Of a stretch of 64,000 bases of DNA, positions 34,069 through 59,000 are shown in pieces. The DNA lies in contig NC_092348.1 in NCBI RefSeq assembly GCF_963676685.1, positions 56,792,001 through 56,856,000 of the forward strand. The letters run 5' to 3'. Below the pieces are notes generated by a model. That model saw only the letters and a program-made list of their open reading frames with translations, was not told the DNA's origin and ran no database searches. How positions within the stretch are numbered: the stretch's first letter is position 1; every line of letters begins with the position of its first letter. The position numbers and the translations under genes are program-made. This DNA is from Mytilus edulis (Eukaryota).

Positions 34069-37000
34069 TCAATGTATCAACACTGATTTAATGTAACTGA
34101 TAGACACACCATGGTTTATAATGTCCACATGTCCAATTCCTTGAAATGCTTTCGAGTGGAATGGCTGTGTTTGAAGATGTTTCCATGGCAAGCAACCCTC
34201 GAGACTTCTGATATTAACAGTTTGGTCGCCATCTTCATCTACAGGTTTTGGTCGTTTGTCCGGAAATGCGCCTTCTTCATAGACCCATTTAGCTGTAGTA
34301 TTCAAACCGTTTCCATAGAGACAATGGACTTCTACATTCGGGGGCCTCAATGGGTTGACCAAACCTTCCACATCTTCTCTCATTAAAAACCCATCTGTAA
34401 AGTTAAGGTCTTTGAAGAGCTGTTGGTAATCGTTCACAGTGTAGTTCCGTCTAGGTGTTTGGATTAAAACCTCAGCCTTGTTCCAAAACTGATTGGTCGG
34501 CATAAGGAAGGCGGAGCTTGTCATGGAGCGTTGCATTGGACGAGCTTTTAATGCTGCAACTGTTATGATGTTTATATTGTCTCCTGAAAAAAATATTCGA
34601 ACAATTAAGGTCAAACGCTGAGGTTGTAACATATTGTCGTTGAAAATGCTTAAAATAGTCACAAAACTGCAACTTACACATGTACGAGTTCCTTAAGATA
34701 CCTCAACAAATAAATTAGGGAAAACAAATATTCGGTAGTTAAGCAATGTACTGTTCACAGAACATGGTCTGCTCAGTAATCTTTCTGGAGCAACTGCGAT
34801 CACTCCGACTTTAGACGTGGTTCGTGATTTTAATTCAGTAGTCTTCAATGTTGTGTTTTGGACACTGTTGTTTGTCTTTTCAAGCATCGTTTTTTTCTCT
34901 CTTGGCAGTGTCAGTTTTTCTTGAAAGAATGATTTTTTTTATTGTCCTTTAATTTCTTCTATCTCTTTTAAATATTGAATGAAATATTACTAAAACACAG
35001 CATGCATTTAACTAAATGTATTGATGAATTTACTTAAATATATATGGATTATATTGCAATAAATGATTATTTTTCAATCTTTACCAGAAACAATCATCCT
35101 CAAGGCTTTGACACTCCCTCCCCACGGTGCACCAAGTGTTATAAATGATCTGATGTATTTGTCCTTCCATTCCTGACTTTGATGGTTAAGAAAGTACAGT
35201 ATCACCAAGTTTCCTAAGCTGTGGGCTAAAAGAACAACTTTTGTGTTGTTGTTCATGTAGTATGTTTCTTCTACCAGCTTTGTCAAATTTGTATAATAGT
35301 CTTCCAGCTCATCTGAAATTGAGAGTCGTGTAATTTTCCGTAATTTTTGCTTTAAAATATGAAACTTTGTGAAATTAAGATTGCTCATAAGGAAACGCAT
35401 TTCATCGACTCAGATCATTGAACAGGAGCAGCATATGCAAGAATAAGATTCTTTATTTGAACCTGTGTGAAAATTTACCTTGACCTCCGGCAGTTGAGGC
35501 CGACTTCGATATTTTAACGTTAGTACACGTTTAGTCCCATGAAAAAATTAGATACATAATTGTCATTTCCTCAGCACGTGCCAAATACACAGTCGATGTG
35601 TTTTTATTTCTAAGTTTACAATTTCTTGGATCCAAGTTTATTGTAGTACGACGTTTTTATTTTGTAAAGTTTTTCCATTTTTTATTCATTTCTCAAATTA
35701 TGAATTATTAATTTGCTTTCAAAACATTTAAATGATTGGAGTTTTTAACCACCTTGACTTGCTATACAGCCCTCACCTCTTCGGCCTGACTTGCGCCTTT
35801 TTGGGGCATTTAAAATAAAAAAATTTATCATAACATAATTGTAATTTAAATTAGGACTGTCTTAGTAAAATGATACAAGGCAAAAGATTGTGAATGCTTC
35901 TATTAGTTTGTGTAGTCTTCTTATCCATTGACTTACTTGGTGATCTTCTAAAATCGTATGCAGCACCTCTTATAGTTTTATTCCGAACATATCCCCATTT
36001 TACCATGTTCTCTGCTAGTTCGTGGAAGTAACCAACTGAAGAAAAAAAAACGTTATTTTCATGAGAACTGCATTGTTAAACATATACTAGCATAAAGATA
36101 TCACCTCGAAGAAATATCAAGTGGCCGAAGAATTCATAAAAACTGTGGGTTGCAACTATGACATTGTGTTATGGTTATTTTTGTAACTTAGTATTTCGTT
36201 TTTGCTTTAATATGTACTTTGTGTCTAGAGTGTAAATATACCATTTTCTTTTTCTTGGCCCCTCTTTCTTTGTTGAAATGGTTTTTGTTTTACAGTGATT
36301 AAGATTCTTACAATGTTGACTGCTGTATCATAATATTTGACATTTTTACCAGACTGAGTTTAGGTTTAATCCACCATTATCTACATGAGGAAATGCCTGT
36401 ATCAAATCAGGAATATGACATTTGCTTTCCATTCGTTTGGTGTGTCTCACTTTGAGCTTTTGACTTTGTCATTTGATAAAGGACTTTCCGTTTTAAATTT
36501 TGCTAATAAAAATGTTATTTTAGCCAACCTAGATCACGAAAGTTTAATTTTTAATTTTTTTTTTTATAAAAGAAACTGTTTGAAAGATGACATCTTACGT
36601 TTCGCCAAATGAGTGTCGCTTAACCATTCCACACTATCTGTACCACCAAATCCAGGTACCCGTATGTCAACACCCTCTGGGTAACTGGTTCTATGCGTCT
36701 TGTTGTTATATACTAATCTAAAACATATATAATGAATATTTTCATTAGTATTTTCTGGTAATAGCGGTCATTATTATCATGTTAGGTATGTCTTTGACAT
36801 AATCGAATTGGAATATTAAAAGAAAAGAACCCATTGGCAAACTGAAACATAGGAAAAACAAACAGCAGTACTGTAGTATTATTTATACTAAATAGTAAAA
36901 TAACAAAAATACCTAACTCCGAGGAAAGTCAATTGGCAAAATCAAAAACTCATAAACATCATACGAATTGATAACAACTATTATATTCCAGACTTGGTAC

Positions 37001-38644: not shown

Positions 38645-39400
38645 AATAAGAAGATGTAATATGATTGCTGATGAGAGACCTGTCCAATAAGGTCCAATAA
38701 AGCTGGTGTGAGCAACAATCGGTCACATTACGGCCTTCAATAATGAGCAAAAATTCAATACCGTATAGTCAGCTAAAAAAGTCCCCGACATGAAAAAAAT
38801 AGAAACAAATCAAACTAATTAAAGCAACTTTGAAGGTTTGATTTATAACAAAACAGTACACAAAAAACATATATGACGGACATCAATCAATTACATGCTT
38901 CAGACTTGGGACAGGCACATATAAAGTGTCGCTCGGATTAATATGTTTTGAGCGCTCAACTATCCCCTAACCCGTGAAAGTGGTGTAAAAGCACAAATAA
39001 GAACAAACGGTAAAAATCAGTTGGAAATAGATTGAAGGTGCAAAGACAAAAAATCAAATAACATAACGGAAAAGGACGCAAAATGCCGATTTGAGATTAT
39101 AATCACTATACACAGTTACTGAAAGCTAGTTCAAAGCCAACAACACTGACAAAATAAACACATCATGTAATCCAAGACTTACGCATCAATCAATACATAT
39201 CCAAAGATTTCATTTATGAACGTTGTTAAATTGATGTCCTTTCAGTATAAGTTTATTCAAGCGATCAATGAGTTTACATGGACCATACCTACTCCTCCGG
39301 GCTCTATAAACAACATAGTCATAAGAAATAGGATAGGATATTCTGTTTTTAAAACAAGAATAAAACAACTTTACACGTACAGCACTAGCCAAACATGAAC
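38645..39400 (-). mobile_element. Degenerate 3' remnant of the same Penelope-like family
   Basis: Minus ORF 39210-39392 (…RISYP…YVVYRARRS…PCKLIDRLNKLILKG) resembles the RT C-terminus at 28620-28730 and is followed by the shared 3' repeat. Confidence 0.6.
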
Positions 39401-41048
39401 ATTAAAACTTTGTCTCTACGAAAGAATTTGTACAGATTATTAAGTAATGTGTGGTAACGAAATCCCTAACATAATAATTTTTTATTGTGTGTGTGTTTAT
39501 CAAAAGCCTTGTGTTTCTAAATTGTCCGTATGGTTCTTGGATGCTATGAATATTAAATATATGTAACATGCCCGGTTCATTCTTGTGTTGTCGTGGTTTC
39601 ATGTTGTTCTAAAAAATAGTATTACTTGCAAAAAATTAGTATTATTGTTGCATCATTTCAGACAGCATATTACTAGTTATTGCAAAACAACAGCAACAAC
39701 ATACATCGTTACCGTACCATCGTTAACTTCATATAAGCACAAGCAGGGAGTTCCAATAGATTTTTAATCAGATTGTATGTTACCAAATCTTTTAGGATTG
39801 TGTCATTCATTTTCCGTTCGCATTTAGCTAGTATGCATAAAAGGTAAACTAGCAAAAAAACTAAACTCCAAAGATAATTCAAAACGGATAACCCATAATT
39901 TGACGTATAATGGTTCACTTTTATTAAATTACAAATTGTGACTTGGATGGAGAGTTGTCTCATTGGCACTCATACTAAATCTTCTTATATCTATTTAATG
40001 TAGATGAACCAAAACAGTTATTTTGCTATCTTGTTATTCTAAAATGTTTAGACAAGACTTTACCAACTATTTTATCTTGTCACAAAATGTCTTACAAACA
40101 AGAATGTGTCCAAAGTACACGGATGCACCACTCGCACTATCATTTTCCATGTTGAATGGACTGTGAAATTGGGTAAAAAATATAATTTGGCATTAAAATT
40201 AGAAAGATCATACATGTACCATAGGGAACATATGTTCTAAGTTTTAAGTTGACTGGACTTCCAACTTCATCAAAAACTACCTTGACCAAAAACTGTAACC
40301 TGAAACTCCCGCTTTCATTGTCTATGTTCATTGGACCGTGAAATTTGGGTCAAAAGTCTAATTTGGCTTTAAAATTAGAAAGATCATATCATAAGTAACA
40401 AGTGTACCAAGTTTAAAGTTTATTGGACTTCAGCTTCATCAAAGGAGGGTCGAAAGATACCAGAGGGACAGTCAAACTCATAGATCGAAAATCAACTGAC
40501 AACACCATGGCTAAAAATGAAAAAAGACAAACAGACAAACAACAGTACAACATAGAAAACTAGAGAATAAACAACACGAACCCCACCAAAAACTAGGGGT
40601 GATCTCAGGTGCCCCGGAAGGGTAAGCAGCTCCTGCTCCACATGTGGCACCCGTCGTGTTGCTTATGTTATGACAAGTCAGGTAAATAGTATATATAATT
40701 CGGTAGGTCAAAAAATACCTTGACCAAAAACTTTAACCTGAATAGGGACAGACGAACGAACGAACGGACGGACGTACGAACAGACGCACAGACCAAAAAG
40801 GCATAATGCCCCTCTACTATCGTAGGTGGGGCATAAAAAATACTTCAATAATGATAATGTGAGTAAAACACTTTTTGGGTACCTAAAGCCATGTCTCAAA
40901 TTTAATTTAGTCAAAACTTTCCATAATATGTATATGTTCATGCAATAACCCTATAATACAAATAACGAAATAAAACGATGTTAAATACTTTTTCTAATAA
41001 AAATTTATTGAGGAAGTTCTCATATCTTATAGTTTTTCCAAATATGAA

Positions 41049-44000
41049 CTATTTGATCAAAATGCTTTTGATGTAATCTATTACAACATCCTCTTTCAGC
41101 ATATCTAGATGTTTAATTCCATGAAATTGCTTCGAATCAATAGGCTGTTTCTGAAGCGTTTTCCAACGTAGGCAACCTTCTAAACTTCGCAGAGAAACTG
41201 TATGGTCGCCATCTTCATTTATTGGCGTTGGCTGTTTGTCTGGCCACTCATCTTTTGTGTATACCAAGGTTTTGGCAGTTAGTAACCCAGAGCTGTATAA
41301 GCAGTGTACCTGGACATTCGGAGGTTTCATTGGATCTATTAAGTTCTCTGTGTCTTTCCTCATAAAATATCCATCGGGAAAATTTATATCTGTAAAAAAC
41401 TGTTTATAATCATTCACAGTATAATTTCTTGTCGGTGTCTGAATCAGAACTTCAGTTTTATTCCAAAACTGGTCTGAAGGCAACAGAAAAGCAGAACTTG
41501 GCATTGATCGTTGCACTGAACGTGCTCTTAGAGCCTTTACTGTCGCAATGTTCATATCGTCACCTAAAAAATATAGAGAATCACAATTATGATTATTGTT
41601 CGTGAACATTCAAAAGACGTATGTCTATTTACTTTATAGATATAAACTCGTCCATGTGTGTGTGTTTGTACACAGTGCTTTTAAAACGAAAAATGTCTGA
41701 ACCGTATTTCTAATTTTAATGAAGGTTGGCATCTAGAGATTGTAGTTATTGTAAGTTACTGACAAATTGAAACCGATTTTTTTATATGTTTTCCCTCTTT
41801 CTAAATTTGTATATTGGTGTTGTATCTGTCTGCCATTTTTACATCTTTTAAGAAAAAATATTGTTGAAACTAGGATTCTTGTCAAAAATTTGCATTTCAA
41901 TTGGTACTTTTGAATTTTTTGAAAAGGGTGGTACGTTTTAATGTTTTTCCCCGGTACGAATTCATTAAGTGGAATGTTTGTTAAAATTGTATATATATTT
42001 ACTAGTTTTTGGTGGTAAGACTAAAAGTATCAGTTCAAGTATTTACAGATTCATCTTGTTTCAAAATCGAATTTATTCTCGGTTTGTTTGCATACGGGCA
42101 ACAACAGAACTGTAGCTAATCTTGTTCGAATTTATTCTTTTTATTTGCATATAAATACAACAGCTTACAGTAGGTTACATTTACTAGAAACATGAATGAG
42201 GTACATATAATTAATAAAAATATCAAATACCAGACGCCTGCATCTTGATAGTTTTGACACTACCTCCCCATGGCGCAGATAAAGTGACGAAAGATCCAAT
42301 GAATTTGTCCTTCCATTCCTGGGGTTTCTGGTTAAGAAAGTAGAGTAACACAAGGTTACCTAAACTGTGACCTAAAAGCACAACTTTACTGTTGTTGTTG
42401 ATAGTGTATGTATCTTCTACCAGCTTTGTAAGTTGTGAATAATAACCACTCATTTCGTCTGAAAACAAAGTTAAGATTTTTAAAGTGATATAACACGTGT
42501 TTTTGAAATCGTAATTTTAATGAAATTATTGAACTAATGCAAAAAATTGAGAATGGAAATGGGGAATGTGTCAAAGAGACAACAACCCGACCATAGAACA
42601 GACAACAGCAGAAGGTCATCAAACAGGTCTTCAATGCAGCGAGAAATTCCTGCACGCGGAGGCGTCCTTCAGCTGGCCCCTAAACAAATATATTATTCTA
42701 GTTCAGTGATAATGAACGCCATACTTAACTCCAAATTGTACACAAAACCCTAAATAAAAAAATAATACAAGACTCTAACAAAAAAAGGCAGCGGCTCCTG
42801 ACTTGGGACAGGCGCAAAAAATGCGGCGGGGTTGAACATGTTTATAAGATCTCAACCCTCCTCCTATACCTTGTATGTTTGCTAAACTAATATGAGTTTT
42901 CTATGCACGGTTTTGTACATTTATTTTGAATCCATAACATATAATCGACAATTTTTCTTTTAGTTTCAACAGTATTTTTATTCAAACAAACTGAATTGGA
43001 TTGACCAATAGGCTGCTGCAAAGTCTATGTAAGCCCTCTCCATAAAACATGGAACAATATATTACATTCAAACAGGCACAAACACAATGGCAACACACAA
43101 TTAATTTGAAATAAAGTTTAATTTAGTGAAAAGTGTGTCTGCTTATAAACTTTCGTGTTTTATTGCCAAGTTTTACTTATTCAAAACTTACGTTAACAAT
43201 CAACAAAAAAACCCATTAAGCACGTGAAAATTTTTATTGCTTTTATTTCCTCTCACGAGGTAATCAGGAGAAATAACGTTCAAACCACACACATATTGAA
43301 AGAGTCTTTCAAAATTAAAATAAGAAGATGTGGTATGATTGTCAATTAGACAACTATCCACATAAGGTCAAATGCAGTGGCGGATCCAGAACTGTTTGTA
43401 AAGGGGGCCCCTGACTGACCTGGGGTCGCGCTAGTCACACTTCAGTGATTCCCTATATAATCAACCAAATGTTTTCCCCGGGGCCCGCCTGTGCAAACAC
43501 TGCAGAAAATAGATATAAGAAGATGTAACATGAGTGTCAATGAGTGCCAACTCGCCTTCAAAGTCACAATTTAGATGTAGACTAAATGATCAGCAAAGGT
43601 AAATGTGAATGTCATATTTCAAAATTTGATCAAAAAACGAGAAAAAACGAAAACTTTTTTTTCAAATTTTGAATTATTAAGTGCGGTTATTCTGATGTAT
43701 TGCTATCACATAAATTTCCATTATGCAAATTAGTTTTGGGTTTACAACCGATCTACAAAAAGAGTGCACACGCTGAAATGTCTCGCCTTATTTACTAATC
43801 ATTGATATAATGTTGATAGTCCTAAATATAAAGCTTTATTGCAACTGTCACATAAACTTAACATTTACCAAGAAATCTAAACATAGACCAATGAACCATG
43901 AAAATGAGGTCAAGGTCAGATAAACCATGGCAGACAGGCATGTACAGATAACAATTCTGCCATACAACAAATATAGTTGACATATTGCTTATATTTTGAG

Positions 44001-47000
44001 AAAAACAGACACAAAAAAAACCACAAAAAACCTATTGAGCAATGAACCGTGAAAATGAGATCAAGGTCAAATTAAATCTGCGCGACTGACAGATAGATCA
44101 TAAAATATATCCATTCACCAAATATAGTTGACCTATTGCATCAAAACTAAAAAAAACCTCAACTTTGACCACTAGACCATGAAAATGAGTTCAAGGTCAA
44201 ATGACAGTACACCTTACAATAATTCTATACACTAACTATGGTAGACCTATTGCACACAGTATATAAGAAAAACCGACAAAACACAAAAACTCAAGTTTAA
44301 CCACTGAACCGTGAAAAAGAGGTCAAGGCCAGATGTCACCTGCCAGCTGGACATGTACACATTACAGTCCTTCCATACACCGAATATACTAGAGCTATTG
44401 CTTATAGTATATGAGATGGACTTAACCTTGTTCACTGGTCCATTAAGTGACGTCGAGGTCAAGTGAAAACTGCCTGACAGACATGAGGACCTTGCAAGGT
44501 ACGCACATACAAAATAAATTCATCCTATTACTTATAATATGTATAATTAGAGAGAATTTAAGATTACAAAAAATCTAAACTTTTTTTCAAGTAGTCGTTG
44601 AACCATGAAAATGGGACCAAGGACATTGTTCATGTGACTGACGGAAACTTTGTAACATGAGGTATCTATATACAAAGTACGAAGCATCCAGGTCTTCCGC
44701 CTTCTGAAATATAAAACTTTTTGAAGTAAGCTAACGACGCCGCCGCCGCCACCGCCGGATCACTATTCCTATGTAGAGCTTTCTGCGACAAAAGTCGCAG
44801 GCTCGACAAAACTATAGATCCACGGTCATTATCTAGTACATTAAAAATAACATTACTTATCGCGTGTTTTAAATTCAATTTTTCAACAGATACTCATAAA
44901 AATATTGTTTTTAAACACAAATCAATAATAAGAAAATGTGCTGTCGTTATATAAAATTGAGAATGGAAATGGGGAATGTGTCAAAGAGAAAACTAGCCGA
45001 TCATAGAGCAGACAACAGCAGAAGGTTACCAACAGGTCTTCAATGCAGCGAGAACCGATGTACACGTACCGAAAAATTGTGTTAAAGCTTGCGGATATCT
45101 CAAGAACGTTTTGCGACACTCCCGGCAATGACCGGTAACTCTGTTATTGTTTTTGCGGGAAAAAGTGAATGGCTTCTCATATCCAATCTTTTAGAAAAAA
45201 ATGATTTTTTTACAGAAGAGTGTCCACACTGCACTATTATGAAAGTAGTAGATTAAAATGATATCGAATGGATGAAAATTATATATGTTCAAGCAGTCGT
45301 AATATTAATATAATAAATGTATATAGCAACAAACCAGTGCACATTCTTGGACTATTAGTGTATTAGTATAATAGTCCCAGGTATACTGATTTGTATCACT
45401 ACAATATAATAGCCATTATGGACGGTGTGGTTGAATATCCTGTTATTTATTCATCATCCACGCACGAACTTGTATCAGAAAAAAGATTATATCTCTGTAT
45501 ATTAACCTCAGTTTCAGGTATAGAGATGTGACCTTTTTCTGTTACATGCGTTTTTGACCATCCACAAGAACTTGCGGTCATCCGATGTTCAGTACTTCAG
45601 TACTTTGATTTAAAATGTAATATAATTTTATTTGATAATAACATTTTCAGATTAGAAACAAGAAATTATAATAAGTTTTTTGAACTGTTCTATATTATCT
45701 ATCTTTTTTTATTTCTACAGGAATATTGTTTCAAAAAACTGTACCGGAATATAGAAATGTTTTTTTTTCTCATAAAATTTGTTCTCGGAAGTAGTATGAA
45801 AAGACAATTACTTGTACTGTCCAATGAACGCAAGGCATATCTTGCATTAACATTTTGTTTATTGTGAAATAATAGTTCAGGTTGCAAGACTATTTACACA
45901 CTTATACATTAATAATCCTTTAGATTCATTATTATTCGTTGGATACCAATTTTGGTGGATTTCGTTGGTAAAGGTGAACCACGAAATTAAATGTTCAACG
46001 AATGACAAATTTTCTATAGGCTTGTTTGCGGACTTTTGCAAAACCACGAAATCAAATATCTACGAACATGCAAGTTTTCCTCAATCCACGAATATTGGTA
46101 CCCACGAAAATAAATGAATCCACAGTATCAGTATGTGATTCTTGTTTAAAAAGTTATTCATCCTAATTTTCTTGGTATGAATATGCATGTAATATTTGCC
46201 ACTGTCCGTTAAGAATCTTTACATCCATCCATTGTTAAGCCATCAGCCATGCCAATAGTTATGCGAATCTTCTATGAGATGAAATGCCAAATAATAAAAA
46301 TGCCACACATAACAAATGTATGCACATTCAACGCGTTATCGAAACGTATTGTGTGCACATATTCAGACAACGTCAACAGAACATGCACAGATCTATTGGT
46401 AACGTCTATGATATTTTGTTTGTAACGTCACAATAACGCACAGAAGAAACCTACTTCTCTGTTGTCGAAAGGAGCTGTTACTTCACGACCGCAAACATTA
46501 GCGTATATGATAAAACTGAATAGTCTTTGAAGATCTTGAGATTTAATTTTAAGAAGAATTAATCAAAGACGAAGGTAAGTTGCTATTTTCATATTTATAC
46601 AAATAGATAGAAAGTATTATACTTCGATAAAAATCCACTCGATTTCCGTACTAGTCCTGATATAGAGTAAGCGGGTTTGTTTGGTATTTGTTTTCAAACC
46701 ATTTTGGAAATAAATGACTCACAAATGAGTTTGGTGGGCATTATATTTGGTATCGATGTATAATAGACGGATTTTTTTCGCCTGTTTAAGATAAATATTT
46801 AAATGAGGTTCACCATAAAATAACAGAATTCTATATAGCTATTATTTGGAACTGTAAGAACATATATAGTAAAATAAAAGGCAATATATGTTAATGAAGT
46901 AATTCTGGCTTTGTTTTTGGTATTGCGTAATAGTCAAATCTAACTTTTAAACGTTGGGATTGAGTAACAGGAAGTTTGAAGAAGAAAAATCTACAAAACG

Positions 47001-50000
47001 AACTAATTCTAAACATTTATAAAAAAAAAAAAGAAAGAAAAAAGACGATAAGAAAAGAAACCACAAAAGCCATGTATAATCTTCATGTAAATACTCGCTA
47101 GTAAAGGAATGTTTATTTTTGTTCCCCTTTTTCAGATTTCCGTCTTTCTGCGTGCATGGTAATGTTATTTCATGGTTTTATCTTCTGCTTATATACGTCA
47201 GATGTTATATTGTTGACTTGGTTTATACTAGTTTTTCTCTTTTAATAACAGCATGTTCTTATGTCTGTTAAAAGTAACCCCCCTTTTTTTAAATTTATTA
47301 TAGTTTGACGATATGGTAGTAGACCAAGACTACCAGGATGAAGAAATGTTTTCTCAGTAAGTATATTATTTTAACTTATATCGTGCCGGCAAGACGACAC
47401 ATACATTAACCAAAGTCAGGGATGTTTTGTTGAAATTTATTTTTTCACGGAGGTATACGAAATTTAGTTCACCCTTTATTAAACCGGAGATTTGTTAGTC
47501 ATATCTTTAATCCACGAATATAGAAGATAGTCAAACATCCAGGGAGAAAACAGAATCGAGCAATACAAATATTGTTAGGCATGAATATCAATAAATTTTA
47601 TTCAAGGGATATTATAAAATTATTAAAACAAGTCTAAAAACTGAGGGAAATTTAGAAATGTACATGATAAAATTATAAGATATAAAGCAACTGCTCTTGG
47701 TGTCAAACGTATAAAGCGATGACCGTCTGCGTCAGAATTCCTAGTTTCCGCAAACCAAATTTATAGTTTAGGAAAAGACTGCTCTACAGTTCTATTTATG
47801 CGATCTGGTATTCGAGTACAAGACGCGAAGTGGTTAAAAAAAGACGTACGGACCAGGAGACGTGAGATACAAAATGTGTATTTTTTTTTACTTTTTTATA
47901 CAGTCCTAACGGCACAAACAGAAAGAGATCACCTTACTATTAGAGTTTAGCTTTAAATAAGGTCAATCTTTCTTCGATCTAGTAGATTTATTTCGACCCC
48001 CACTCATAAATTATGAACGTGAAGCATTGTTCGCTGTCTTAGTAGTATTATATATGACCCCATGTATATGCGCTTGCATTGTCCGGGTTCCCGGGTTCAA
48101 GTCATGCTTTTGTTTTAGATTTTTTTTCTGAATTTTCCATATAAAATGTATGGAACTAAATTAATGGATAATTGTATGGAAAAAAAAACATGTATATTTA
48201 AAGGGATAAGCAGTTGAAATAGTTTATCTGAAATGTATTAGAGACGTAGGTTGTCAAACACATTGACAAGTATAGAAGTTGATGTAGAGAAATTTAAATA
48301 TAACTAGAATACATCCGCGAAATTTCGCGGGCATTCAGAGCTTGCTTGAAAGTATATAAATTGTGGTAGGAAAGAATATTTTGTAAAATATTGAATTAAT
48401 GGAAGATTTCCTGAGGAAAGGTATTAAAAGTCATTGGTACTTTGGACAGGACAATTTTTTTTGGTTTTCTATAAATTTCAATAATTTTAGCGTTTATCTG
48501 TTTATTATGAACATTCATTACCATAAATAAAGTGTCTTTCCTTTTTACTATCAATTCTCAATTAACTAATCGATCCACGGCGGTCATTGACATATTATAT
48601 AGACTCTCTCTATTTAATAAACTCTGTGACCGCCGTGGATAGTAAACTTGAAAATGATAGCAGATAGCAAATACACTTTATTCATAGTATAACATGTATG
48701 TACAAAGAATACAGAAAAACGTAAACCGGAAGTCTAGGCTGACTGAAAATTCCGTCCAATGACGGAAACAATATATTTTCTTTCGTTTTCCTTCCAAAAT
48801 AACCCATACTGAATAATCATAAGCAAGGATGACAAGTGCGACAATAATGGTACCTATATGACACGAAGTGGGATGATTTATTTATTGTGAAAGAAAGAGA
48901 CGAAATGAATAGTGTAGAAGCCTGAGAAAAAAATCCAAGGGGTTACACACTATTGATGAAAAGAAAGCATTTGCCCTATCATTTTAAAAGGGTATATATG
49001 TATTCAAATATTACATACAACAATTGACCTATCATTTTAAAAGGGTATATATGTATTCAAATATTACATACAACAATTGACCTATCATTTTAAAAGGGTA
49101 TATATGTATTCAAATATTACTTACAACAATTGACCTATTATTTTAAAAGGGTATATATGTATTCAAATGTTACATACAACACTTGACCTATCATTTTAAA
49201 AGGGTATATATCCCAAACAAAAAAAAATGAGGAATAAATCATGGTAACAAATGATAAACAAATCGTATGATTTCTTTGTGATTTGAAAGTGATAAAATTT
49301 CACATGCAAATGAGCTAACAAATCACAATAACAAATCACGAACAAATTGCTTACAAATCATAAGCAAATCAGGGTAACAAATGATAAACAAATCGTATGA
49401 TTTCTTTGTGATTTGAAAGTGATAAAATTTCACATGCAAATGAGCTAACAAATCACAATAACAAATCACGAACAAATTGCTTACAAATCATAAGCAAATC
49501 ATAAACAAATTGCCAAGAAATTGTTTTGAAATCATTTACAAATCATAAGCAAATTGTTTTCAAATCGTTAAGAAATTGTTATCAAATCTTTAACAAATCA
49601 GAAGTAAATCATATTCCTACCTCAAGCAAATCACAAGCAAATCGTAATTAAATTGGCATCAATCATCAATTCACAGATTATATCATTAACATCCAGATCA
49701 AAAATAAGTTCTGCCCCTGAAACCCCAAAACTTTGAAGCGCAAGTGTCTTCATTTTACCTTTAATAGCTACTCCACTAATTGTAAAAAGAAGTACTATCT
49801 TTGGTTGCGATGAGGGACAAATTGTTCTTTGTGAAGTTTCTCTTACTTTTTACCCGAAATTTGAAAAAAAAACATAGGCAACCACGTGTACTTAGTAGAA
49901 TAATGTCGAATAGGTGATGGGTCTTAGTCCTGGTCCAAATCTGCTACATTGTAATATATATAGCTTTGTCCATTTTGCCCGGGACCTTGTCAGTAAACAA

Positions 50001-53000
50001 CAATTAAAACATTAAACTTGCCAGTGAATTTTATCTGCTGGCGCGGGAAGCTAGTCTTGAAATGTTTTGATCTGTTTACACATCTTTTACACATTTTTAT
50101 TTTTAAAATTAATCCTAACATCACTAAACTATCATGAGAATAACGAGATACTGAAATGCACAGTTTCTGAATTTTAAAGGTTAACATTTGAATAGTATTA
50201 GTTAAATATGTGAACTTATAAATATAAAGATTCCTTACCACCGTCATCTTTCATAGACTGAATAAAACTCCCCATCTTGCAACCTTCTTTGTTCAGTTAA
50301 TATAGAACAGTATTTGAAATTTGAATTTGACCTCAACCGGAAGTCAGAGAGATAGATAAACAAAGAAACCTGGAATGCATTAACATTTTATTCATTGTAG
50401 CAAATCATCAATGAATCACACCAAGATAGCTAAGAAAGTTAACAAATCATTTTCAAATCATTTCATATGATATTCAAAGTTAACAAATCATAACGAAATC
50501 ACACCGTTCTAGCGAACAAAGTTAACAAATCTCTTTCGAATCATTTCATACGATATTCTAAGTAAACAAATCATAAAGAAATCACACAAAAACAGAAACA
50601 AATGGCTTACAAATCATACCAAAGAAAGAAATCACATAGAAATCAGATTTAGGGAATTTGGAAAATTCTGATTTGTCTATGATTTGTTTAATGAATCGCA
50701 AGCAAATGGTACAAACAAATCGCAGAATCACGATTTGAAAGAGATTTGAAAACGATTTGAAAGCAATTTGTTCATTTGTTTTTCTGTTTGGGATATGTAT
50801 TCAAATATTACATACAACAATTGACCTATCCTTTTAAAAGGGTATATATGTATTCAAATATTACATACAACAATTGACCTATCATTTTAAAAGGGTATAT
50901 ATGTATTCAAATATTACATACAACAATTGACCTATCATTTTAAAAGGGTATATACGTATTCAAATATTACATACAACAATTGACCTATCATTTTAAAAGG
51001 GTATATATGTATTCAAATATTACATACAACAATTGACCTATCATTTTAAAAGGGTATATATGTATTCAAATATTACATACAACAATTGACCTATCATTTT
51101 AAAAGGGTATATATGTATTCAAATATTACTTACAACACATTACTTTATTTTTTTTAAAGGTCAGAACAGAAAGAGAAAACTCTTGAGTCAGATATTGATA
51201 TGGTTGAAAGAGAAATCAAAAGAAAGAATGAAAGAATCATCGAATTGGAATTAATGCTAGAAGAAAAGCAAGATTGGTTCAATCTGAAGTCTCAAATGGT
51301 AAAGAAGCTTGAAGGTGAACTCAATTATGTTCATGCTCGTCACCCAGAACGTTTTACCTTTGACGACGACGGGACAAGCTTGGTACCTAAGTCATTGGAA
51401 CAAACATTGAAAGATCTGGAGCGAGAAGAGAGAGAAGAAACATTTCGCACAAAGTACATGCCCGTTTATCATAAAGAAACGGAAATATTCCGTAAACGAG
51501 GCAAATACCCAACTAATGTCCCGTATTTTAATGAGGTATCTATGGCATCAGAATTTTTAAAGAAGAAATATTTAGAGGCGTTTGGCGAGTGTTTTTCTTT
51601 TGATTACAAAAAGAAGTCTTTTCCATTAAAACAAGACCCTATCTCTCGTAAACACATCAGACCATCTCAGTCATCGTTTATACAGCGAGAGGGCAACAGG
51701 AAATTCTTGGTTTCCGGTCATCTTGGTGAGACAGAGCTACTCCCAGCTGTCACAGAGGCATGTGATCTGGAAAGGTTTTCTGAAATTCCAGCAAACAAGT
51801 CTTTAACCGGGTTGGACGATTTAAAAGTTATGTATGCAATAGAAAATTTAACCAGGGACAAGAATAGTGAATATGATGAAGATTGCGACTGGAAAAACAT
51901 GACATCAATAAACATTGCCTATGAACTCAAATTAGATAAACAAGTCAACTTTAATGAGATTAGAAAGAAGTGTGGTGATACCCCTATAAAACTTGGAATC
52001 ATGACAAATGAATCAGTCGAGAAGAACTGGGGGCAAGGTGGAGAAAGTTTGAATATGTGGAGGACAAGGCCAAAGCTTGGACGCCCAAATTCACCACGAC
52101 CATCTAATGATAAAAAACAAGCAGACCGTGCTAATGTTGTAGAATTGATAAATGGAAATAATCAATTCAATACTGTGAGAGGAACCGCCAAAAAACTTCC
52201 AACTGAAACATTGAAAGAACATGGTCTCAAGAAATCTTTAAGCATGGAATCCGTATTTGTAGGAGATGGTACAAAAATGCGCCCACATTTTAAATGGCGG
52301 ATGGGCGACGAATGTGTTTCCTTAGAAAAGTATATAAATGTTTATACTAGAAATCCAGAAGAATTGTACGAAGCTGTTAAAAAACGGGCTATTGAAAAAG
52401 AGGAAGAAGAAGACTACGAGGAAAATGTATTGTATCATGAAGAAATCAAAGCTAGTCTAATCGGTATCGATGAAACTAAAATGAAGTCAAATTTAAGAAT
52501 TTTAGATAAATTTTTAAGAGAAGAAGAAGAAAAAGAAAAAAAGAAAGCTAAATCAACACTGAAACAAGTCAACACTGAGAATTGTGATGAGGCAATAGAT
52601 AGTACCCTTAATGAAGAAGTAAGAGCCGAGAAGGAAAAGACAGTTTTGCAACAAGACCAAACCGGAAGTTGTTATGAGGATATAGACGCTACAGATGAAG
52701 TCGGTGTTGAGAAGAAAATGAAAACTAGCTTTGACATAATTGAAGAAATCAAAGCTAGTATAATCGGTACCGATAAAGCTAAAATTAAATCAAATTTGAG
52801 AATTTTGGATAATTTGATAAGAGAAGAAGAAGAAAAAGAAAAAGCTAAATTAGAACTGAAACAAGTCCACACTGAGAATGCTGACCAGGCCGCCGTAGAT
52901 GTTACTGGTAATGACAAAATGAGTGACGAGAAGGAAAAGATAGTTCTGCCACCAGACCAAACCGGAAGTTGTTGTGAGGATACAGACGGTGCAAATGACG

Positions 53001-56000
53001 TTGGTTTTGAGAAGAAAATTAATACTTGTTTTGACATAATTTTTGAAAAACCAAAGAAAAGAATGTCTAAACCCAAACTCTCCTCCGAAAAAAGAAAAAC
53101 TGCCAACCTGATGCCTAACGTCATAGACCAGAATATTAAGAGGAATGAAAACAAAGAAGATGTAAAACTGGAGAAAAAGAAAGTTAATACTAGTTTTGAC
53201 ATAATGTTTGAAAAACCAAAGAAACATACTTCTAAACCCAAACTATCCTCGGGTAAAAGAAAAACCTTCAATCTGATGGCGAATATCACAGACCAGAATA
53301 TTAAGAGCAATGAAAATACTGAAGATGTTAAACTGGAGGAAAAGAAAGTTAATACAACATTCGACATTATGTTTGACGGTCCAAAGAAAAAAAGGACTAA
53401 ACCGAAACTCACTTCTGGTGGAAGAAAGGCAAAGTTTCAATTGAAACGTTCTAATGATGAAAAGAAAGACAAAAGTCATGATAACGAACAAAAAGAAGAT
53501 GCAACAACTGCTGACAGTCAAGTTGTTGTTGAAAATGTTGAAAAAGAGCATACATTAAAGGCAAATGTAAGTTTTGATGTCTTTTTCGATAGTCAAAAGA
53601 AACTGAAACCTAAACCAAAGCTGAGCTTTATCAATAGAAAGAAGGAAAACGAAACAAAAAGCAAAAGTGACGTTAGCGAAGTCCTAAAAGAAGAGAAACA
53701 TGAGAAATTGCCTATAGTACCTAGTAAAACAACTGAGGACAAACTATCAAATGGAGGAAAACTCGGAGGAAAGTTTACATATGGAAAACTCGGGAGAAAG
53801 TTTACCAGTGACGTCATCAGGAAAAATGACAATGAAATTAGGTTCCGATTCTCAATTCTCCATGGCACCACTATTATCCCAAGCAGAATCCCTGTTATGG
53901 TTAGGAGATTTGACGAACAAAACATGTCTTTAACCGGACTAAACAATGAACAGCCACACTTTAGATCCGCCAGAAATATTCCTGTCCGTATAATGAGGTT
54001 AACTAAAACAAACAAGGCAACTATAACTTGCCCGCTAGCTGTAAGATCGTTCCCGGAGAGCAAAATACCAGTTAGACGAGGAATTGATATTAAAATCAAT
54101 AGCACAGGAAATGCTAAAAGTCCGATTGGTGATGATAGGAGATCGCCTAGAAAAAGAGAGAGAGGTACAAAATTGCCCCGAATCACAAGGAAATCTAGAA
54201 TACCGGTCCGAATAAAGGGGTTTGTTTGGAAAACTAACGAGAGTGAAGACAAGCGAAAAACAGATGAAAGCAGACGCTTACTTGCTCCTCTAAGTAGAAT
54301 TCCAATTCCAAAAGATAAAATACGTCGTCCTAGTGACTGCATAATACCAAGGCTTGATCCGAATGAACATTTACCCCAAATATTTCATAGTAGTTCAAAG
54401 AGAGAAGAGCAAGTTAAATTTCCTGAAACAAACCGAATTCTTGTTTCCGGTACTCCCATGACCATAGGCGAGAAAGGCGAAAGAACTTATCCAGAATTCC
54501 TGCAGTTACCTTCTGTTATGGGAACGTTACCACCAATAGTCGGCAGAAGTGACACGTATGTAAACCGACCATTGTCAGCCTCTGGATTAAAAAAACTTCC
54601 GCCAATTAAAAGCACAAGCAAAACAACGGAAATGGAACGTCCGATGTCGTCTGTAAGGTTATCGCCGTTGTTTACCGCCTTTGAGAATACAGAAACCCGA
54701 CCACTATCGGCAATTGGATCACCAAAAGTTCCACCAATTATAGATGGCAATACGTTCGAAATGTATCGTCCTTCGTCATCATTATCTGGGTATGCACTAC
54801 TTCCACCTATTCCAAGTTATAAGCGAGGCTCAGTTGAAGACGATAAAGTACCAGTTGAAGAATCAAACCGATCGAGAGGAAACTGATGTATTACCCAAAA
54901 GGGCAGAATAATTATGATTTTTTTAATCTTATTTTCTTTTTATGTTTTGTTTTATTGATATAAAGATTTTTCTATACACTTGTTGTTTATTTATTAATTT
55001 ATGAAAAGAAAAAAGTCTACGAAGGAATCATTCTGAGAACTTAAACATAAATAAACATTTTTATTGGAACTGAAATTGGTATTTAATATTTATGAGGGTC
55101 TGTATGGCAGTGAAAGTTTGTTTTCATTTCTGTAGTCTTTAATTTATTTTGAGATATTTCTCTATCTATCCTTAATTTGCTTTGAGCATTATTTTCTTTC
55201 TCTTCGAGTATATACATAGATAAATAAAGGATTTTGAAAGATACTCGAAACGTATTATGCACATGGAAATATATGTGCTGGAGACGGATAAGATATATAC
55301 AGGAAAGAAATCAAAGTTTGCATGGACATCTTTCTCTTTTAACAAATCATGAAATAGTGTTATACTATCGACAAATTCATTTACTTTTCGATTGCTAAAA
55401 TCTGGATGAAAATAACACTCTAAATATTATGCGTCAAGGAGATTGACCTTCATGAGGAACGCTTTAAACCAAATACATGTATATAAAAGCAAGGAATATA
55501 TTTTAAAACAGGTTAAAACGGTAAGCACTACAGGATATAAGGTACCGAAAAATAGAAGTCCATTGTGTTGGCCTGTAGATTTATTTTGATTTGTTGTGTC
55601 ACTATCTAATTAAAGTACACTCACATCTCCTTTTAGGGTTAGTGTTAGGGTTAGGATTAGGTTAGGGTAAGTGTTATGGTTAGGTTAGAGTTAGGGTTAG
55701 ATGATACCTGCCAGACAGACATATACAGTTTACAATCCTTCCATACAACAAATATAGTTGACCTATTGCTTATAGTTTAAGAAAAATAGATCAAAAACAA
55801 AAAAACTTAACACTGAGCAATGAACTGTGAAGATGAAGTCAAGGCCAAATAAATCATTCAAGAGTGACATGTACATCATCAAATATTTCCATACACCAAA
55901 TATAACTGACCTACTGCATTTAGTTTTTAGTAGAAAAAAAAGACCAAAACTCAAAAACTTAACTTTGTCCAATGAACCAGGTGCCGAAGACCTTACAATT

Positions 56001-59000
56001 ATTCCATATACAGTAGACCTATTACATACAGTATCAGAAAAAAACAGACCAAAACAAAAACTATAACCATTGAACCATAAAAAATGATGTCAAGGTCAGA
56101 CGACACCTACCATTTGGAGATTTTCACCTTTAAATTCTTCCATACACTAAATATACTAAACCTATTGCTTATAAGTTATAGTATCTGAGTTACTTGACCA
56201 CCAAAACTGAACCTTGTTCACTGATCAAGGTCAATTGAATACCGTTTGACAGACATAAAGACCTTACAAGGTACCCACATACAAATATCCTATAACTCAT
56301 AAAATGAGAGAGAAATTAACATTACAAAAAATCTTAACTTTTTTCAAGTAGCCACTGAACCATGATAATGAGGTCAAGGACAATGGACATGTGACAGACG
56401 GAAACTTCGTTTTAAAACGCATCTATATAAAAAATATTAAGCATCCAGGTCTTCCACCTACTAAAATATAAAGCTTTTAAAAAAAATAGTTGACGCCGCC
56501 GCCGTCGCTATCGGATCACTATCCTAATGTAGAGCTTTCTGCGAAAAAAGTAGGAGGCTCTAAGAAAAAAAACCCAGTGGCGGATCCAGAACTTTTCATA
56601 AGGGGGTCCGCTCCACCCATGCTTCAGTGATTCCCTATATATTCAACCAACCTTTTTCCACGAAAGGGGAGGCCAAGCCCCGTGGATCCACCTATGAAAT
56701 GAGGAGTGGATGTAAGCAGTTATAAGAAACGGTACGGCATTAAACTATGAGAAAACCCATACCGTAAAATCTGCTATAAAAAAATTATCTCAAATTGAAA
56801 ATTTTTAAATAGTTCAAATGAGAAAACTAACGGCCTTATTTGAAACAGAACAATTTACGAAAAACAATTATGACAGACATCTACAAAGGGAACGACTGAA
56901 CTATACGGGCTCCAGACTTGGAACATGCACATAAAGAATATGGCAGGGTTAAACATGTGCCGGAGCGTTCAACCCTCCCCTGACCTTGGATAGAAGTGTA
57001 ACAACACAACAAAAGAACACACTATAAAAATTAATTGAAAATGTCTTTACTCATCAGATCGATACAAAGACCTTTTTCGCTTAGTTTAAAATCATCTCCA
57101 TGATCAGAAAAAAAATGTAACACGAGTAGTTTCCAAAGTTTGCTACTTTTCGATTTTGAGTCATCCAAGCATTTTACGTACATTTTGTACATTGTGTTTT
57201 TGCATTCCCACTCTTTAGAACTTGAACGCAGCTGATGAATGAACACTTGCCTTTATTGCATTCATTGGGGGAAGACTATTTGATATTCTAGGGGAGTTGT
57301 GGAGGTTTTTGGACATGCATAATCTGACCTGGTAATGACAGAAAAATAAATTTGACCAATATAGGATGAAAACTAACAGTCTGTACCACAAAATGTAAGA
57401 AAAAGGCCACAATACCCCCCCTCCCCAAATAAATAAAATGGTCGTCTCCTAACATTTGAAATGATTAGATACATAGTTTATGATTCTCGCTTTTTAACAA
57501 CTGAATTTTAAGCGATTTTAAGATAATGTGATATACTGTTAATTAATTTCTGATTTTGTAATATATCTTACTTTAGTTTTAGCCTGGGGTCCTGGTTAAT
57601 CTTGTCAGTACGACGCGCAGCTAGATTGGGCCGGATCCCAGGCTAACTTTAGTTTGAGTACTTACTTGGTGCTTTTCTGAAGTCATATGGAGCCCCACGT
57701 ACAGTTTTATTTCGAACGTAACCCCACTTAACCATATTCTGTACTATCATTGCATAGTAACCAACTACTAAAAAATAAAACGAAATTATATTATTTACAC
57801 GTAAGAATGAGCATCTAGCTGAAAGCATTTATACTCATATACATGATTAGCATTGCGAAATTCTAAAGTTTGAACTGGTGGAAAATCTGTTAAAAGGCGG
57901 GAAGGTGTAACTCGTCAAAGTTTTTGCCCCAAATCGGTGTTTTAATGAGAAAAAGACAGAATTTGCAATTTTGAATCCTAGTATCGTATTTTCAATTTTT
58001 GTTTCATTTATTTTGTTAAGTATATAGTGGATCATTCGAGAGAGAGTAAATGTCTTTTTTCTGAGGTGTATACAAACATGTTTTAATCTTGCAATTTAAA
58101 AATTAAGACATATAATTTATGTATTGCTAGAGTCTTAATGTCTACTTACATTTCTTAGAAATGTGAAAATCCGTTAGCCACTCGACACTTTCCGTATCTC
58201 CAAATCCTGTTACCCGTATGTCAACTCCGTCAGGATAACTGGTTGTGTGTGTCTTGTTGTTATATATAAGTCTGTAAAATGTTATTTACATACTAGCTTT
58301 TGTTGTTATATAAAAGTGAGTGTTATTTGTATGTAAGCATTAATTGTCAGGTGAGGATACAGAACATTTTCGGTAAAAAAAGGGGGGTCAAGTGAGTATC
58401 GCAGTAGAACATAATTTCTTACGGTCATTTTTTGTCTTTAAAACTGAAATTTTGATGTGGTTAACCTTTGAAACAAAATGTTACAGTAGATGAGAATATA
58501 CATGAAGCTCTACTATGATAAAATCTTTTCCGAATACTTTTTAATGGGATTACTACACGTGGAAAACATAATAAGATAAACAAAACAAAAACAAAATCTT
58601 AGCTGTCTATTTATAAATTGTACGACTTTTTTTTTTAAATCTTTAAGATTGGTAGAATATGTTTTTCTTCACATAATTACTATATAGATCAAATAATATA
58701 CATTTTTTGTACATTTCATTTACTTATTTTTGAGAAGAAAGTCTGACAATAAATTGAATTGATGAATCGAAACTTAAAAACAAGTAATAATATGACCGAT
58801 CATAATTTGCCGCGGCATACAACTTCCTAAATACTGAAAAACTCCAATGATTCTTTCTCAATAAAATATTAATAATAATACCTGAAGTTTGAAATAAAGC
58901 AATCCGTCGCTTCTGGAGTCAGGACACTAAATATTCGTACCCACATGGTATAAAAATGCTTAGTTACTTTGGTGCAGGTAACATGAGGACCATGCGATGG

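What the first reader, a model, noticed from the sequence alone, without database searches (positions are those of the whole stretch)
43319..57060. 13.3-kb gene-carrying block bounded by two MITE copies and a 5-bp duplication, splitting an older repeat
Seen in sequence: the common repeat that is intact at 38645-39030 and 31140-31500 starts at 43319 (aagaagatgtggtatgatt…acaactatccacataaggtc-AAATG), stops, and resumes only at 56697 (AAATG-aggagtggatgtaagc…gtacggc…cccataccgta…). Between the halves, 43375-56696 begins and ends with copies of the same ~120-bp MITE, with outer inverted ends cagtggcggatcc and ggatccacctatg. Removing the block shrinks PLA2G15-B intron 4 from 15,207 to ~1,880 bp, versus 624 bp in paralog A. 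The cargo is a complete intron-containing gene with upstream exons. Inference: either composite transposition using the outer MITE ends, or integration of a circular DNA by recombination at a resident MITE. Either would be a concrete route to the gene presence/absence variation known in mussels.
Basis: partly seen in the sequence, partly recalled or inferred. Interest (0 to 1): 0.78.

Follow-up and report, generated by a model that had tools for sequence, protein, structure and literature searches.

The report
Gene-carrying block moved between two MITEs
A 13.3-kb piece of mussel DNA carrying a complete gene sits inside an intron of another gene, bounded by two small transposons and one shared 5-base duplication, which suggests the pair moved everything between them as one unit, long ago.

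Summary
An old dispersed repeat in a 15.2-kb intron of an LCAT/PLA2G15-like gene is split at one AAATG by a 13,322-bp block (43375-56696). The block begins and ends with full, directly oriented copies of one MITE family (M1 43375-43493, M2 56575-56696). That family makes 5-bp target-site duplications (14 of 23 independent insertions perfect). M1 and M2 each lack a duplication of their own, but together they share a perfect one.

The cargo is a truncated copy of a multi-copy Mytilus gene segment. Its similarity to the paralogs starts exactly at M1's inner end. The gene is intact (1256 aa, two coding exons, dN/dS about 0.39).

My best reading is macrotransposition by the outer MITE ends, as at the maize White Cap locus (confidence 0.55). 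Recombination or gap repair at a resident MITE cannot be excluded.

The event is old: the MITEs lie 11-14% from their consensus. Block sequence occurs in all four public runs laid (three organism labels), and contigs bridge the left junction in one of them. A 97% identical protein exists in M. galloprovincialis. No empty site, solo-MITE allele, donor or second copy was found, so the link to present-day gene presence/absence variation is unsupported. An earlier unchecked scan note reports another twin-MITE composite in this genome.

The parts
43319..43374 (+). Left part of the split old dispersed repeat (SINE-like; class not determined)
   Evidence: Aligns to positions 1-~56 of 20 family copies and to in-window relatives.
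43370..43374 (.). Left copy of the 5-bp target-site duplication AAATG
   Evidence: single pentamer at this position in 19 of 20 family copies.
43375..43493 (+). M1: whole MITE of subfamily alpha. The 5' inverted repeat CAGTGGCGGATCCAG is perfect. The 3' inverted repeat is degenerate (GGGCCCGCCTGTG) beside an internal deletion. M1 has no duplication of its own (AAATG versus CAAAC, 2 of 5).
   Evidence: K2P 0.14 to the alpha consensus.
43494..43684 (+). Start of cargo. It is homologous (81-84%) to sequence upstream of the paralogs on C4 and C6. The homology begins exactly at M1's inner end (CAAAC in the window, CAGAC or CAGAG in the paralogs, which have no MITE there).
43754..44813 (+). Copy 1 of a dispersed retroposon-like repeat ('X-Y') with internal ~150-bp repeats and an A-rich 3' tail
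   Evidence: The family has at least 7079 candidates.
46166..47678 (+). Upstream region shared with the paralogs (69-91%), holding coding exon A of the cargo gene (47313-47356, ATG...CA|gtaagt)
48971..49211 (.). 53-bp tandem array, left part, inside the cargo gene's intron
49207..50796 (.). Young 1.6-kb non-autonomous repeat (up to 98% identical to copies elsewhere), inserted in the 53-bp array
50793..51137 (.). 53-bp tandem array, right part
51160..54886 (+). Coding exon B of the cargo gene (acceptor ...taaag|G; open frame to the stop). The protein is K/E-rich and repetitive, with no Pfam domain, and was found only in Mytilus.
   Evidence: dN/dS 0.39 against the intact paralogs.
54887..55636 (+). 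3' flank shared with the paralogs. The homology ends at ...cctttta (55636).
55633..55700 (+). Interstitial degenerate telomere-type repeat, (TTAGGG) about 11.7 units
   Evidence: It matches arrays at chromosome ends.
55695..56573 (+). Copy 2 of the X-Y retroposon-like repeat, 5'-truncated. Its A-rich tail abuts M2.
56575..56696 (+). M2: whole MITE of subfamily beta, both inverted repeats good. It has no duplication of its own (AAACC versus AAATG, 3 of 5).
   Evidence: K2P 0.107 to the beta consensus.
56697..56701 (.). Right copy of the 5-bp target-site duplication AAATG
56697..57070 (+). Right part of the split old repeat
   Evidence: 74-78% identical to family copies over query 1-374. The alignment continues from the same consensus position. 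K2P 0.19.
42226..42459 (-). Host gene (LCAT/PLA2G15-like, copy B) exon downstream of the intron, PF02450 positions 99-176
57664..57759 (-). Host gene exon upstream of the intron, PF02450 positions 66-99

Best explanation
The block is a macrotransposon, that is, a composite DNA transposon. In a donor locus holding one paralog of a Mytilus-specific gene family, two MITEs of one family had inserted independently about 9-13 kb apart in the same orientation. M1 sat at a CAAAC site upstream of the gene. M2 sat just behind a retroposon tail downstream. A transposase supplied in trans then paired the 5' end of M1 with the 3' end of M2 instead of the two ends of one element. It cut out or copied everything between them and integrated it at AAATG inside an old repeat in an intron of the LCAT/PLA2G15-like gene. 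That integration made the family's usual 5-bp duplication.

Shown: the split repeat, the shared duplication, the family's duplication length, the lack of own duplications, and the homology break at M1's inner end.
Inferred: that a transposase joined the outer ends, and that a donor locus existed.

The event is ancient and the nested gene has stayed intact.
For: (1) One insertion event. Nineteen of 20 family copies of the old repeat are continuous across the junction with a single pentamer, and the window has AAATG on both sides of the block.
(2) The family's duplication is 5 bp. Of 23 independent insertion sites, 14 are perfect, 3 match 4 of 5, and 6 match 3 or fewer (loci).
(3) M1 and M2 are each whole elements with both inverted repeats, directly oriented. 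Each lacks its own duplication (2 of 5 and 3 of 5), while the outer pair is 5 of 5. This is the same signature used to call the maize Wc Tam3L macrotransposon (passages read).
(4) The cargo's similarity to the paralogs starts exactly at M1's inner end. The paralogs have no MITE there and go on being homologous to each other for at least 2-3 kb further left. So M1 sat inside the donor segment and marks the cut.
(5) The outer inverted repeats match the family consensus, whereas M1's inner one is degenerate.
(6) No donor carrying the M1|cargo junction remains in the assembly (40 of 892 candidates scored). This fits cut-and-paste.
(7) The left junctions are real. In an independent run (X2), a 135-bp contig spans 43333-43467 and a 342-bp contig spans 43443-43784.
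(8) The window holds only these two copies of the family.
Against: No second copy of the composite with other flanks, no donor site, no empty site and no excision footprint was found. Mobility as a unit therefore rests on one insertion.

The same end structure would arise from recombination or gap repair at a resident MITE. The subfamily markers lie only in the left-central part of the element and cannot show whether M1 or M2 is chimeric.

The autonomous partner and superfamily are unknown. PF12940 found nothing, but its control also rang nowhere. The hAT domains found were not linked to this MITE.

The right junction was not checked with reads. In run X7 a 372-bp contig matches only 43510-43740, and its other 140 nt, where M1 should lie, are unlike the window. 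This is unexplained.
Confidence: 0.55

Rival explanations
1. Recombination at a resident MITE. A single MITE first inserted at AAATG in the old repeat. Later a double-strand break in it was repaired from an ectopic donor in which two MITEs flanked the gene segment (synthesis-dependent gap repair). Alternatively, a circle popped out between the two donor MITEs and integrated by homologous recombination into the resident MITE. M1 and M2 would then be chimeras whose outer parts come from the resident element.
For: It yields the same structure: an outer 5-bp duplication, two whole MITEs, and no own duplications. The family is abundant (at least 1052 and at least 508 candidates), so a resident copy is plausible. 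The subfamily markers do not exclude chimeras.
Against: It needs three MITEs and one or two recombination events. These would act on about 120 bp of homology between copies from two subfamilies that differ by a 20-bp indel and about 13% of bases. None of 20 copies of the old repeat carries a MITE at this site. Copy-and-paste repair should leave the donor, and none is in the assembly. The simple one-MITE circle cut from a paralog is contradicted. The sequence left of M2 is a retroposon tail, not the paralog sequence left of the M1 site.
Confidence: 0.3
2. Coincidence or artefact. The two MITEs are unrelated insertions and the repeat halves are two separate truncated repeats, or the assembler mis-joined sequence at MITE copies.
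For: The X7 contig diverges near M1.
Against: The two repeat parts meet at the same consensus position with a perfect 5-bp duplication of the family's own length. X2 contigs from another study bridge both M1 junctions. A mis-join would not create a matched duplication. Only two copies of the family lie in the 64 kb.
Confidence: 0.05
3. The block is a single large, unknown mobile element, for example a giant non-autonomous transposon whose natural termini happen to be MITE-like, rather than two MITEs plus host DNA.
For: MITEs derive from the ends of longer elements, so long relatives with MITE-like ends exist in principle (general knowledge).
Against: Each end is a complete MITE with both inverted repeats, from different subfamilies. 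The interior is colinear with ordinary paralogous gene loci that lack such ends. No other copy of the unit exists.
Confidence: 0.05

Closest known systems
Maize White Cap (Wc) Tam3L macrotransposon and Ac/Ds macrotransposons (hAT superfamily)
   Same: Two separate elements of one family flank host genes. The outer ends share one matching target-site duplication of the family's length. The bounding elements lack their own duplication, and sequence on their two sides is not contiguous in the progenitor. The result is a gene-containing segment copied to a new site (bioRxiv 10.1101/082677, passages read).
   Different: Here the ends are ~120-bp MITEs of two subfamilies, not 4.5-kb elements. The duplication is 5 bp, not 8 bp. 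The host is an animal (a mussel). The target is an intron of another gene. No progenitor locus is at hand, and the event is old rather than post-domestication.
P-element 'macrotransposition' proposed for Anopheles P-MITE origin
   Same: The idea that two nearby copies transpose en bloc using one 5' and one 3' end (PMC1562414, one passage read).
   Different: There it is a hypothesis for how a MITE arose, with loss of the interior. Here the interior of 13 kb is retained with a working gene.
Pack-type transposons (Pack-MULE and the like; recalled, not checked here)
   Same: DNA-transposon ends carrying host gene sequence.
   Different: Pack elements hold gene fragments between one element's own inverted repeats. 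Here two complete MITEs bracket a whole gene with its upstream region and later repeat insertions.
hAT5 group and CMCT clade (Transib and relatives) as candidate superfamilies of the MITE
   Same: hAT5 families make 5-bp duplications. CMCT lineages share 5'-CA..TG-3' termini and make 2-5-bp duplications (PMC12730594, passages read). This MITE is CAGTGG...CCTATG with a 5-bp duplication.
   Different: No transposase was linked to the MITE here. The assignment is open.

Membership tests
Macrotransposon / composite DNA transposon | Segment flanked by two copies of one transposon family with the outer ends in the orientation of a single element | tested here: met
   M1 and M2 are both in + orientation, and both are whole.
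Macrotransposon / composite DNA transposon | One target-site duplication of the family's length flanks the whole unit | tested here: met
   AAATG/AAATG. The family's duplication is 5 bp in 14 of 23 sites perfectly and in 3 of 23 at 4 of 5.
Macrotransposon / composite DNA transposon | The bounding elements lack duplications of their own | tested here: met
   M1 2 of 5, M2 3 of 5.
Macrotransposon / composite DNA transposon | Target was continuous before insertion (empty-site equivalent) | tested here: met
   Inferred from 19 of 20 continuous copies of the repeat family. No true allelic empty site was found.
Macrotransposon / composite DNA transposon | Donor locus, or further copies of the same unit at other sites | tested here: not met
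   No other M1|cargo junction. The paralogs lack the MITEs. Only the best candidates are scored, so absence is not proven.
Macrotransposon / composite DNA transposon | Transposase able to pair ends of separate elements | not testable with these tools
   The autonomous partner was not identified.
MITE | Short, terminal inverted repeats, fixed-length duplication, high copy number, no coding capacity | tested here: met
   117-161 bp. Inverted repeats CAGTGGCGGATCCAG / CTGGATCCGCCTATG. 5-bp duplication. At least 1052 and at least 508 candidates.
hAT superfamily (for the MITE) | 8-bp duplication (5 bp in the hAT5 group) and a hAT transposase sharing the inverted repeats | tested here: inconclusive
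   The duplication is 5 bp, so classical hAT is not met and hAT5 is possible. hAT domains are abundant (150 matches of 631 candidates), but none was tied to these inverted repeats.
Transib / RAG-like (for the MITE) | 5-bp duplication, CA..TG termini, RAG1-core-like transposase in the genome | tested here: inconclusive
   Duplication length and termini fit. PF12940 gave 0 candidates, but its control rang nowhere, so the search is uninformative.
Gene presence/absence variant (mussel dispensable gene) | Absent or hemizygous in some individuals | tested here: not met
   Block contigs were found in 4 of 4 runs laid. Contig depths are similar to the flanks, but the tool warns that contig depth is a poor measure. 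Four runs are few. Supplementary gene lists of the pan-genome papers were not seen.

The most novel reading that the evidence does not exclude
Pairs of MITEs in mussel genomes routinely act as macrotransposons that pick up whole genes and drop them elsewhere, including into introns. This locus would be a fixed fossil of a process that still generates the hemizygous, gene-carrying blocks behind the mussel open pan-genome. A second unchecked note of a twin-MITE composite in the same genome (s1-838866) hints that it is not unique.
Probability: 0.12. Interest if true: 0.8.

Novelty: new member of a known kind. Interest (0 to 1): 0.5.

Why it matters
The cause of the massive gene presence/absence variation in mussels is not established. 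In the one pan-genome follow-up I searched by passages (PMC10514466), transposons come up once in the discussion, and only as a possibility for another bivalve's hemizygous region. This locus is a clean, base-resolved case in a bivalve where a DNA-transposon pair appears to have moved a complete, still-constrained gene into another gene's intron. It gives a concrete signature to scan for: two same-family MITEs without their own duplications, sharing one duplication across a gene-bearing block. It does not itself show present-day variation. My searches found no report of macrotransposons in molluscs, but this is a limited check. One search matched 22 papers and listed 15, none of them on molluscs. 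Searches also found none.

Tried and rejected
Second haplotig or empty site: both flanks were searched against the whole assembly. Only the window itself matched at 100%, and the rest were dispersed repeats.

Other copies of the composite or a donor: the whole block, the M1|cargo junction and the 3' flank were searched. Only MITE-less paralogs at 74-91% turned up.

Do other dispersed paralogs have repeat-bounded ends? No direct or inverted repeats at the ends of the C4/C6 shared unit.

Chimera test of M1 and M2 by subfamily markers: the markers lie only in the left-central part. The 3' G/A difference sits on a CpG and is unreliable (my reading). The test is uninformative.

PF12940 gave nothing and its control was silent.

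Function of the cargo protein: no Pfam domain. Atlas scores of 0.79-0.81 are at chance level.

Rfam on 42400-57700: no family.

Supplementary files were not asked for. The dispensable-gene lists of the mussel pan-genome papers, and Fig. S4 of the Wc paper, could bear on the presence/absence and mechanism claims.


Full report
**Where we are.** The window is G000:C5:56792001-56856000 of a 1.37-Gb, 2368-contig assembly. A protein 100% identical to the cargo gene's product is named from Mytilus edulis, on a contig of the same length as C5.

PF02450 (LCAT) matches place two LCAT/PLA2G15-like genes on the minus strand.
- Copy A has exons at 34114-34605, 35005-35328 and 35932-36030.
- Copy B has exons at 41091-41567, 42226-42459 and 57664-57759.
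- The B intron between the last two is therefore about 15.2 kb. The equivalent A intron is about 600 bp.

**The observation.** The block is 43375-56696 (13,322 bp), with AAATG at 43370-43374 and again at 56697-56701.

The in-window 'intact' repeats are only 70-80% relatives, so I fetched 20 closer copies found with the right half.
- Nineteen of the 20 run straight through the junction position with a single pentamer.
- The pentamer is exactly AAATG in 9 and a one- or two-base variant in 10. One copy has a deletion there.
- That was a miscount.

So an old repeat was split and 5 bp were duplicated.

**The ends.** M1 (43375-43493) and M2 (56575-56696) are both complete MITEs in the same orientation, with inverted repeats CAGTGGCGGATCCAG... 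and ...GGATCCRCCTATG.
- They are only about 87% alike in two blocks and belong to two subfamilies.
- M1 has a 20-bp extra segment shared by 14 fetched copies. M2 lacks it.
- M1's 3' inverted repeat is degenerate (GGGCCCGCCTGTG) next to an internal deletion.
- The family is abundant: at least 1052 and at least 508 first-look candidates, 40 scored each. The 64-kb window holds only these two copies.

**Duplication length of the family.** I fetched 34 copies. Thirty-three could be scored and they represent 23 independent insertion sites. Ten loci share one set of flanks and two share another, because the MITE was carried along inside other repeats.
- Fourteen of 23 sites have a perfect 5-bp duplication.
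- Three of 23 match 4 of 5, and 6 of 23 match 3 or fewer (first seen).
- M1 alone scores 2 of 5 (AAATG versus CAAAC) and M2 alone 3 of 5 (AAACC versus AAATG).
- The outer pair scores 5 of 5.

**The cargo.** The block is not novel sequence. It is a copy of a segment present at five other places, at 65-91% identity: C4:48.13 Mb, C6:10.04, 10.19 and 10.33 Mb, and C2:53.46 Mb.
- The similarity begins exactly at M1's inner end. The window reads ...CCTGTG|CAAAC ACTGCAG, while the paralogs read ...agcaa CAGAC ACTGCAG with no MITE.
- C4 and C6 stay 90-95% alike for another 2-3 kb to the left. So M1 sat inside a larger paralogous unit, and only what lay to its right was brought along.
- On the right, similarity to the paralogs ends at 55636.
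- Then come about 68 bp of degenerate TTAGGG repeats.
- After those lies a 5'-truncated copy of an abundant retroposon-like repeat, whose A-rich tail abuts M2.
- No other place in the assembly holds the M1|cargo junction.
- The ends of the C4/C6 unit carry no flanking repeats.

**The gene.** The named 1256-aa protein is encoded by 47313-47356 (ATG...CA|gtaagt) plus 51160-54886.
- The 3.8-kb intron holds a 53-bp tandem array split by a young 1.6-kb repeat that is up to 98% identical to copies elsewhere.
- The protein has no Pfam domain. All 12 of 12 database hits are from Mytilus.
- Against the two intact paralogs, dN/dS is 0.39 and dS is 0.25. C4 against C6 has dS 0.067.
- Three other paralogs are broken.
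- In a tree of 7 rows, the window gene pairs with an M. galloprovincialis protein (97%). An M. trossulus protein (83%) is sister to that pair. Both nodes have 100/100 support.

**Age and population evidence.** K2P distance to the subfamily consensus is 0.14 for M1 and 0.107 for M2. For the old repeat's right part it is 0.19. The order, repeat first and MITEs later, fits, and the event is old.

Of 24 listed runs, 20 hold part of 40400-46399, with shares of 0.35-0.59, under three organism labels plus gill metagenomes. All are kept as contigs. I laid four of them.
- In X2, a 135-bp contig (1 mismatch) spans 43333-43467, bridging repeat|M1 with 42 and 93 letters on either side.
- Also in X2, a 342-bp contig spans 43443-43784, bridging M1|cargo.
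- X15, X1 and X7 have contigs inside the block at high identity. Examples are 44177-44377, 45586-45912 and 46188-46359.
- Contig depths in block and flank are similar: X2 32-36 versus 30-39, X7 47-51 versus 55-76. The tool warns that contig depth is a poor measure.
- No bridging contig is listed for X15, X1 or X7, and at 43491 only X2 has cover.
- A 372-bp X7 contig matches only 43510-43740. I cannot explain its other 140 letters. They may reflect a polymorphic insertion or a graph artefact.
- No empty-site loose end appears among the rows shown, but most rows are not shown.

**Mechanism.** The signature is two same-family elements, no own duplications, one shared duplication of the family's length, and donor homology breaking at an element's inner end. 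This is exactly what was used to call the Tam3L macrotransposon that created the maize White Cap locus (passages of bioRxiv 10.1101/082677). En-bloc movement of two nearby copies has also been proposed for P elements (one passage of PMC1562414).

I therefore favour macrotransposition by the outer ends (0.55). The rival is recombination or gap repair at a MITE already resident at AAATG, including integration of a circle formed between two donor MITEs. It gives the same product and cannot be excluded (0.3). However, it needs three elements and recombination over about 120 bp of diverged homology. It should also leave a donor. The simple one-MITE circle cut from a paralog does not fit the sequence left of M2.

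**Superfamily.** A 5-bp duplication with CA...TG termini fits hAT5 or the Transib-containing CMCT clade (passages of PMC12730594). I could not tie a transposase to the MITE.

**Verdict.** The finding is real and well resolved. It is a new example, in an animal and with MITE ends, of a known kind of event. It is ancient and apparently widespread among the sampled mussels, so it illustrates a possible route to gene gain but does not demonstrate present-day presence/absence variation. An earlier unchecked note of this scan (s1-838866) reports another twin-MITE composite elsewhere in the genome. I did not test it.

Noticed in passing
window 55633-55700: An interstitial, degenerate telomere-type (TTAGGG)n tract of about 68 bp. 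It sits exactly where similarity to the paralogs ends and is fused to the 5'-truncated end of a retroposon-like repeat. The same words match long arrays at the ends of C1, C2, C3, C13 and C14.
   Followed up: partly
window 49207-50796: A 1.6-kb non-coding repeat, 92-98% identical to many copies elsewhere. It appears recently active and is inserted in a 53-bp tandem array inside the cargo gene's intron.
   Followed up: no
G000:C6 10.04, 10.19 and 10.33 Mb (L023-L028): Three copies of the cargo gene family spaced about 146 kb apart on C6, one in reverse orientation. One is intact (1344-aa frame) and two are broken. This looks like a large segmental repeat.
   Followed up: no
L006, L010, L011, L013, L015-L020: Ten of the 20 best full-length MITE hits share identical flanks (tttacgtaaatatgtcta[g/c]a ... 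ctagaagttttaaaacc). One MITE insertion has therefore been amplified as a passenger inside another repeat family.
   Followed up: no
window 43510-43740, run X7: A 372-bp contig is 97% identical over 43510-43740, but its remaining 140 letters, where M1 should lie, are unlike the window (record 31). It may be a structural allele or a contig-graph artefact.
   Followed up: no
window 52438-53427: The cargo protein's coding exon holds internal tandem duplications with 300-bp and 165-bp periods at 81-82%. Paralogs differ in the number of these units.
   Followed up: no
window 43914-44804 and 55695-56560: Two copies (73% alike) of the same abundant retroposon-like repeat lie in the same orientation near the two ends of the block. 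They are independent old insertions and not part of the block's termini.
   Followed up: partly
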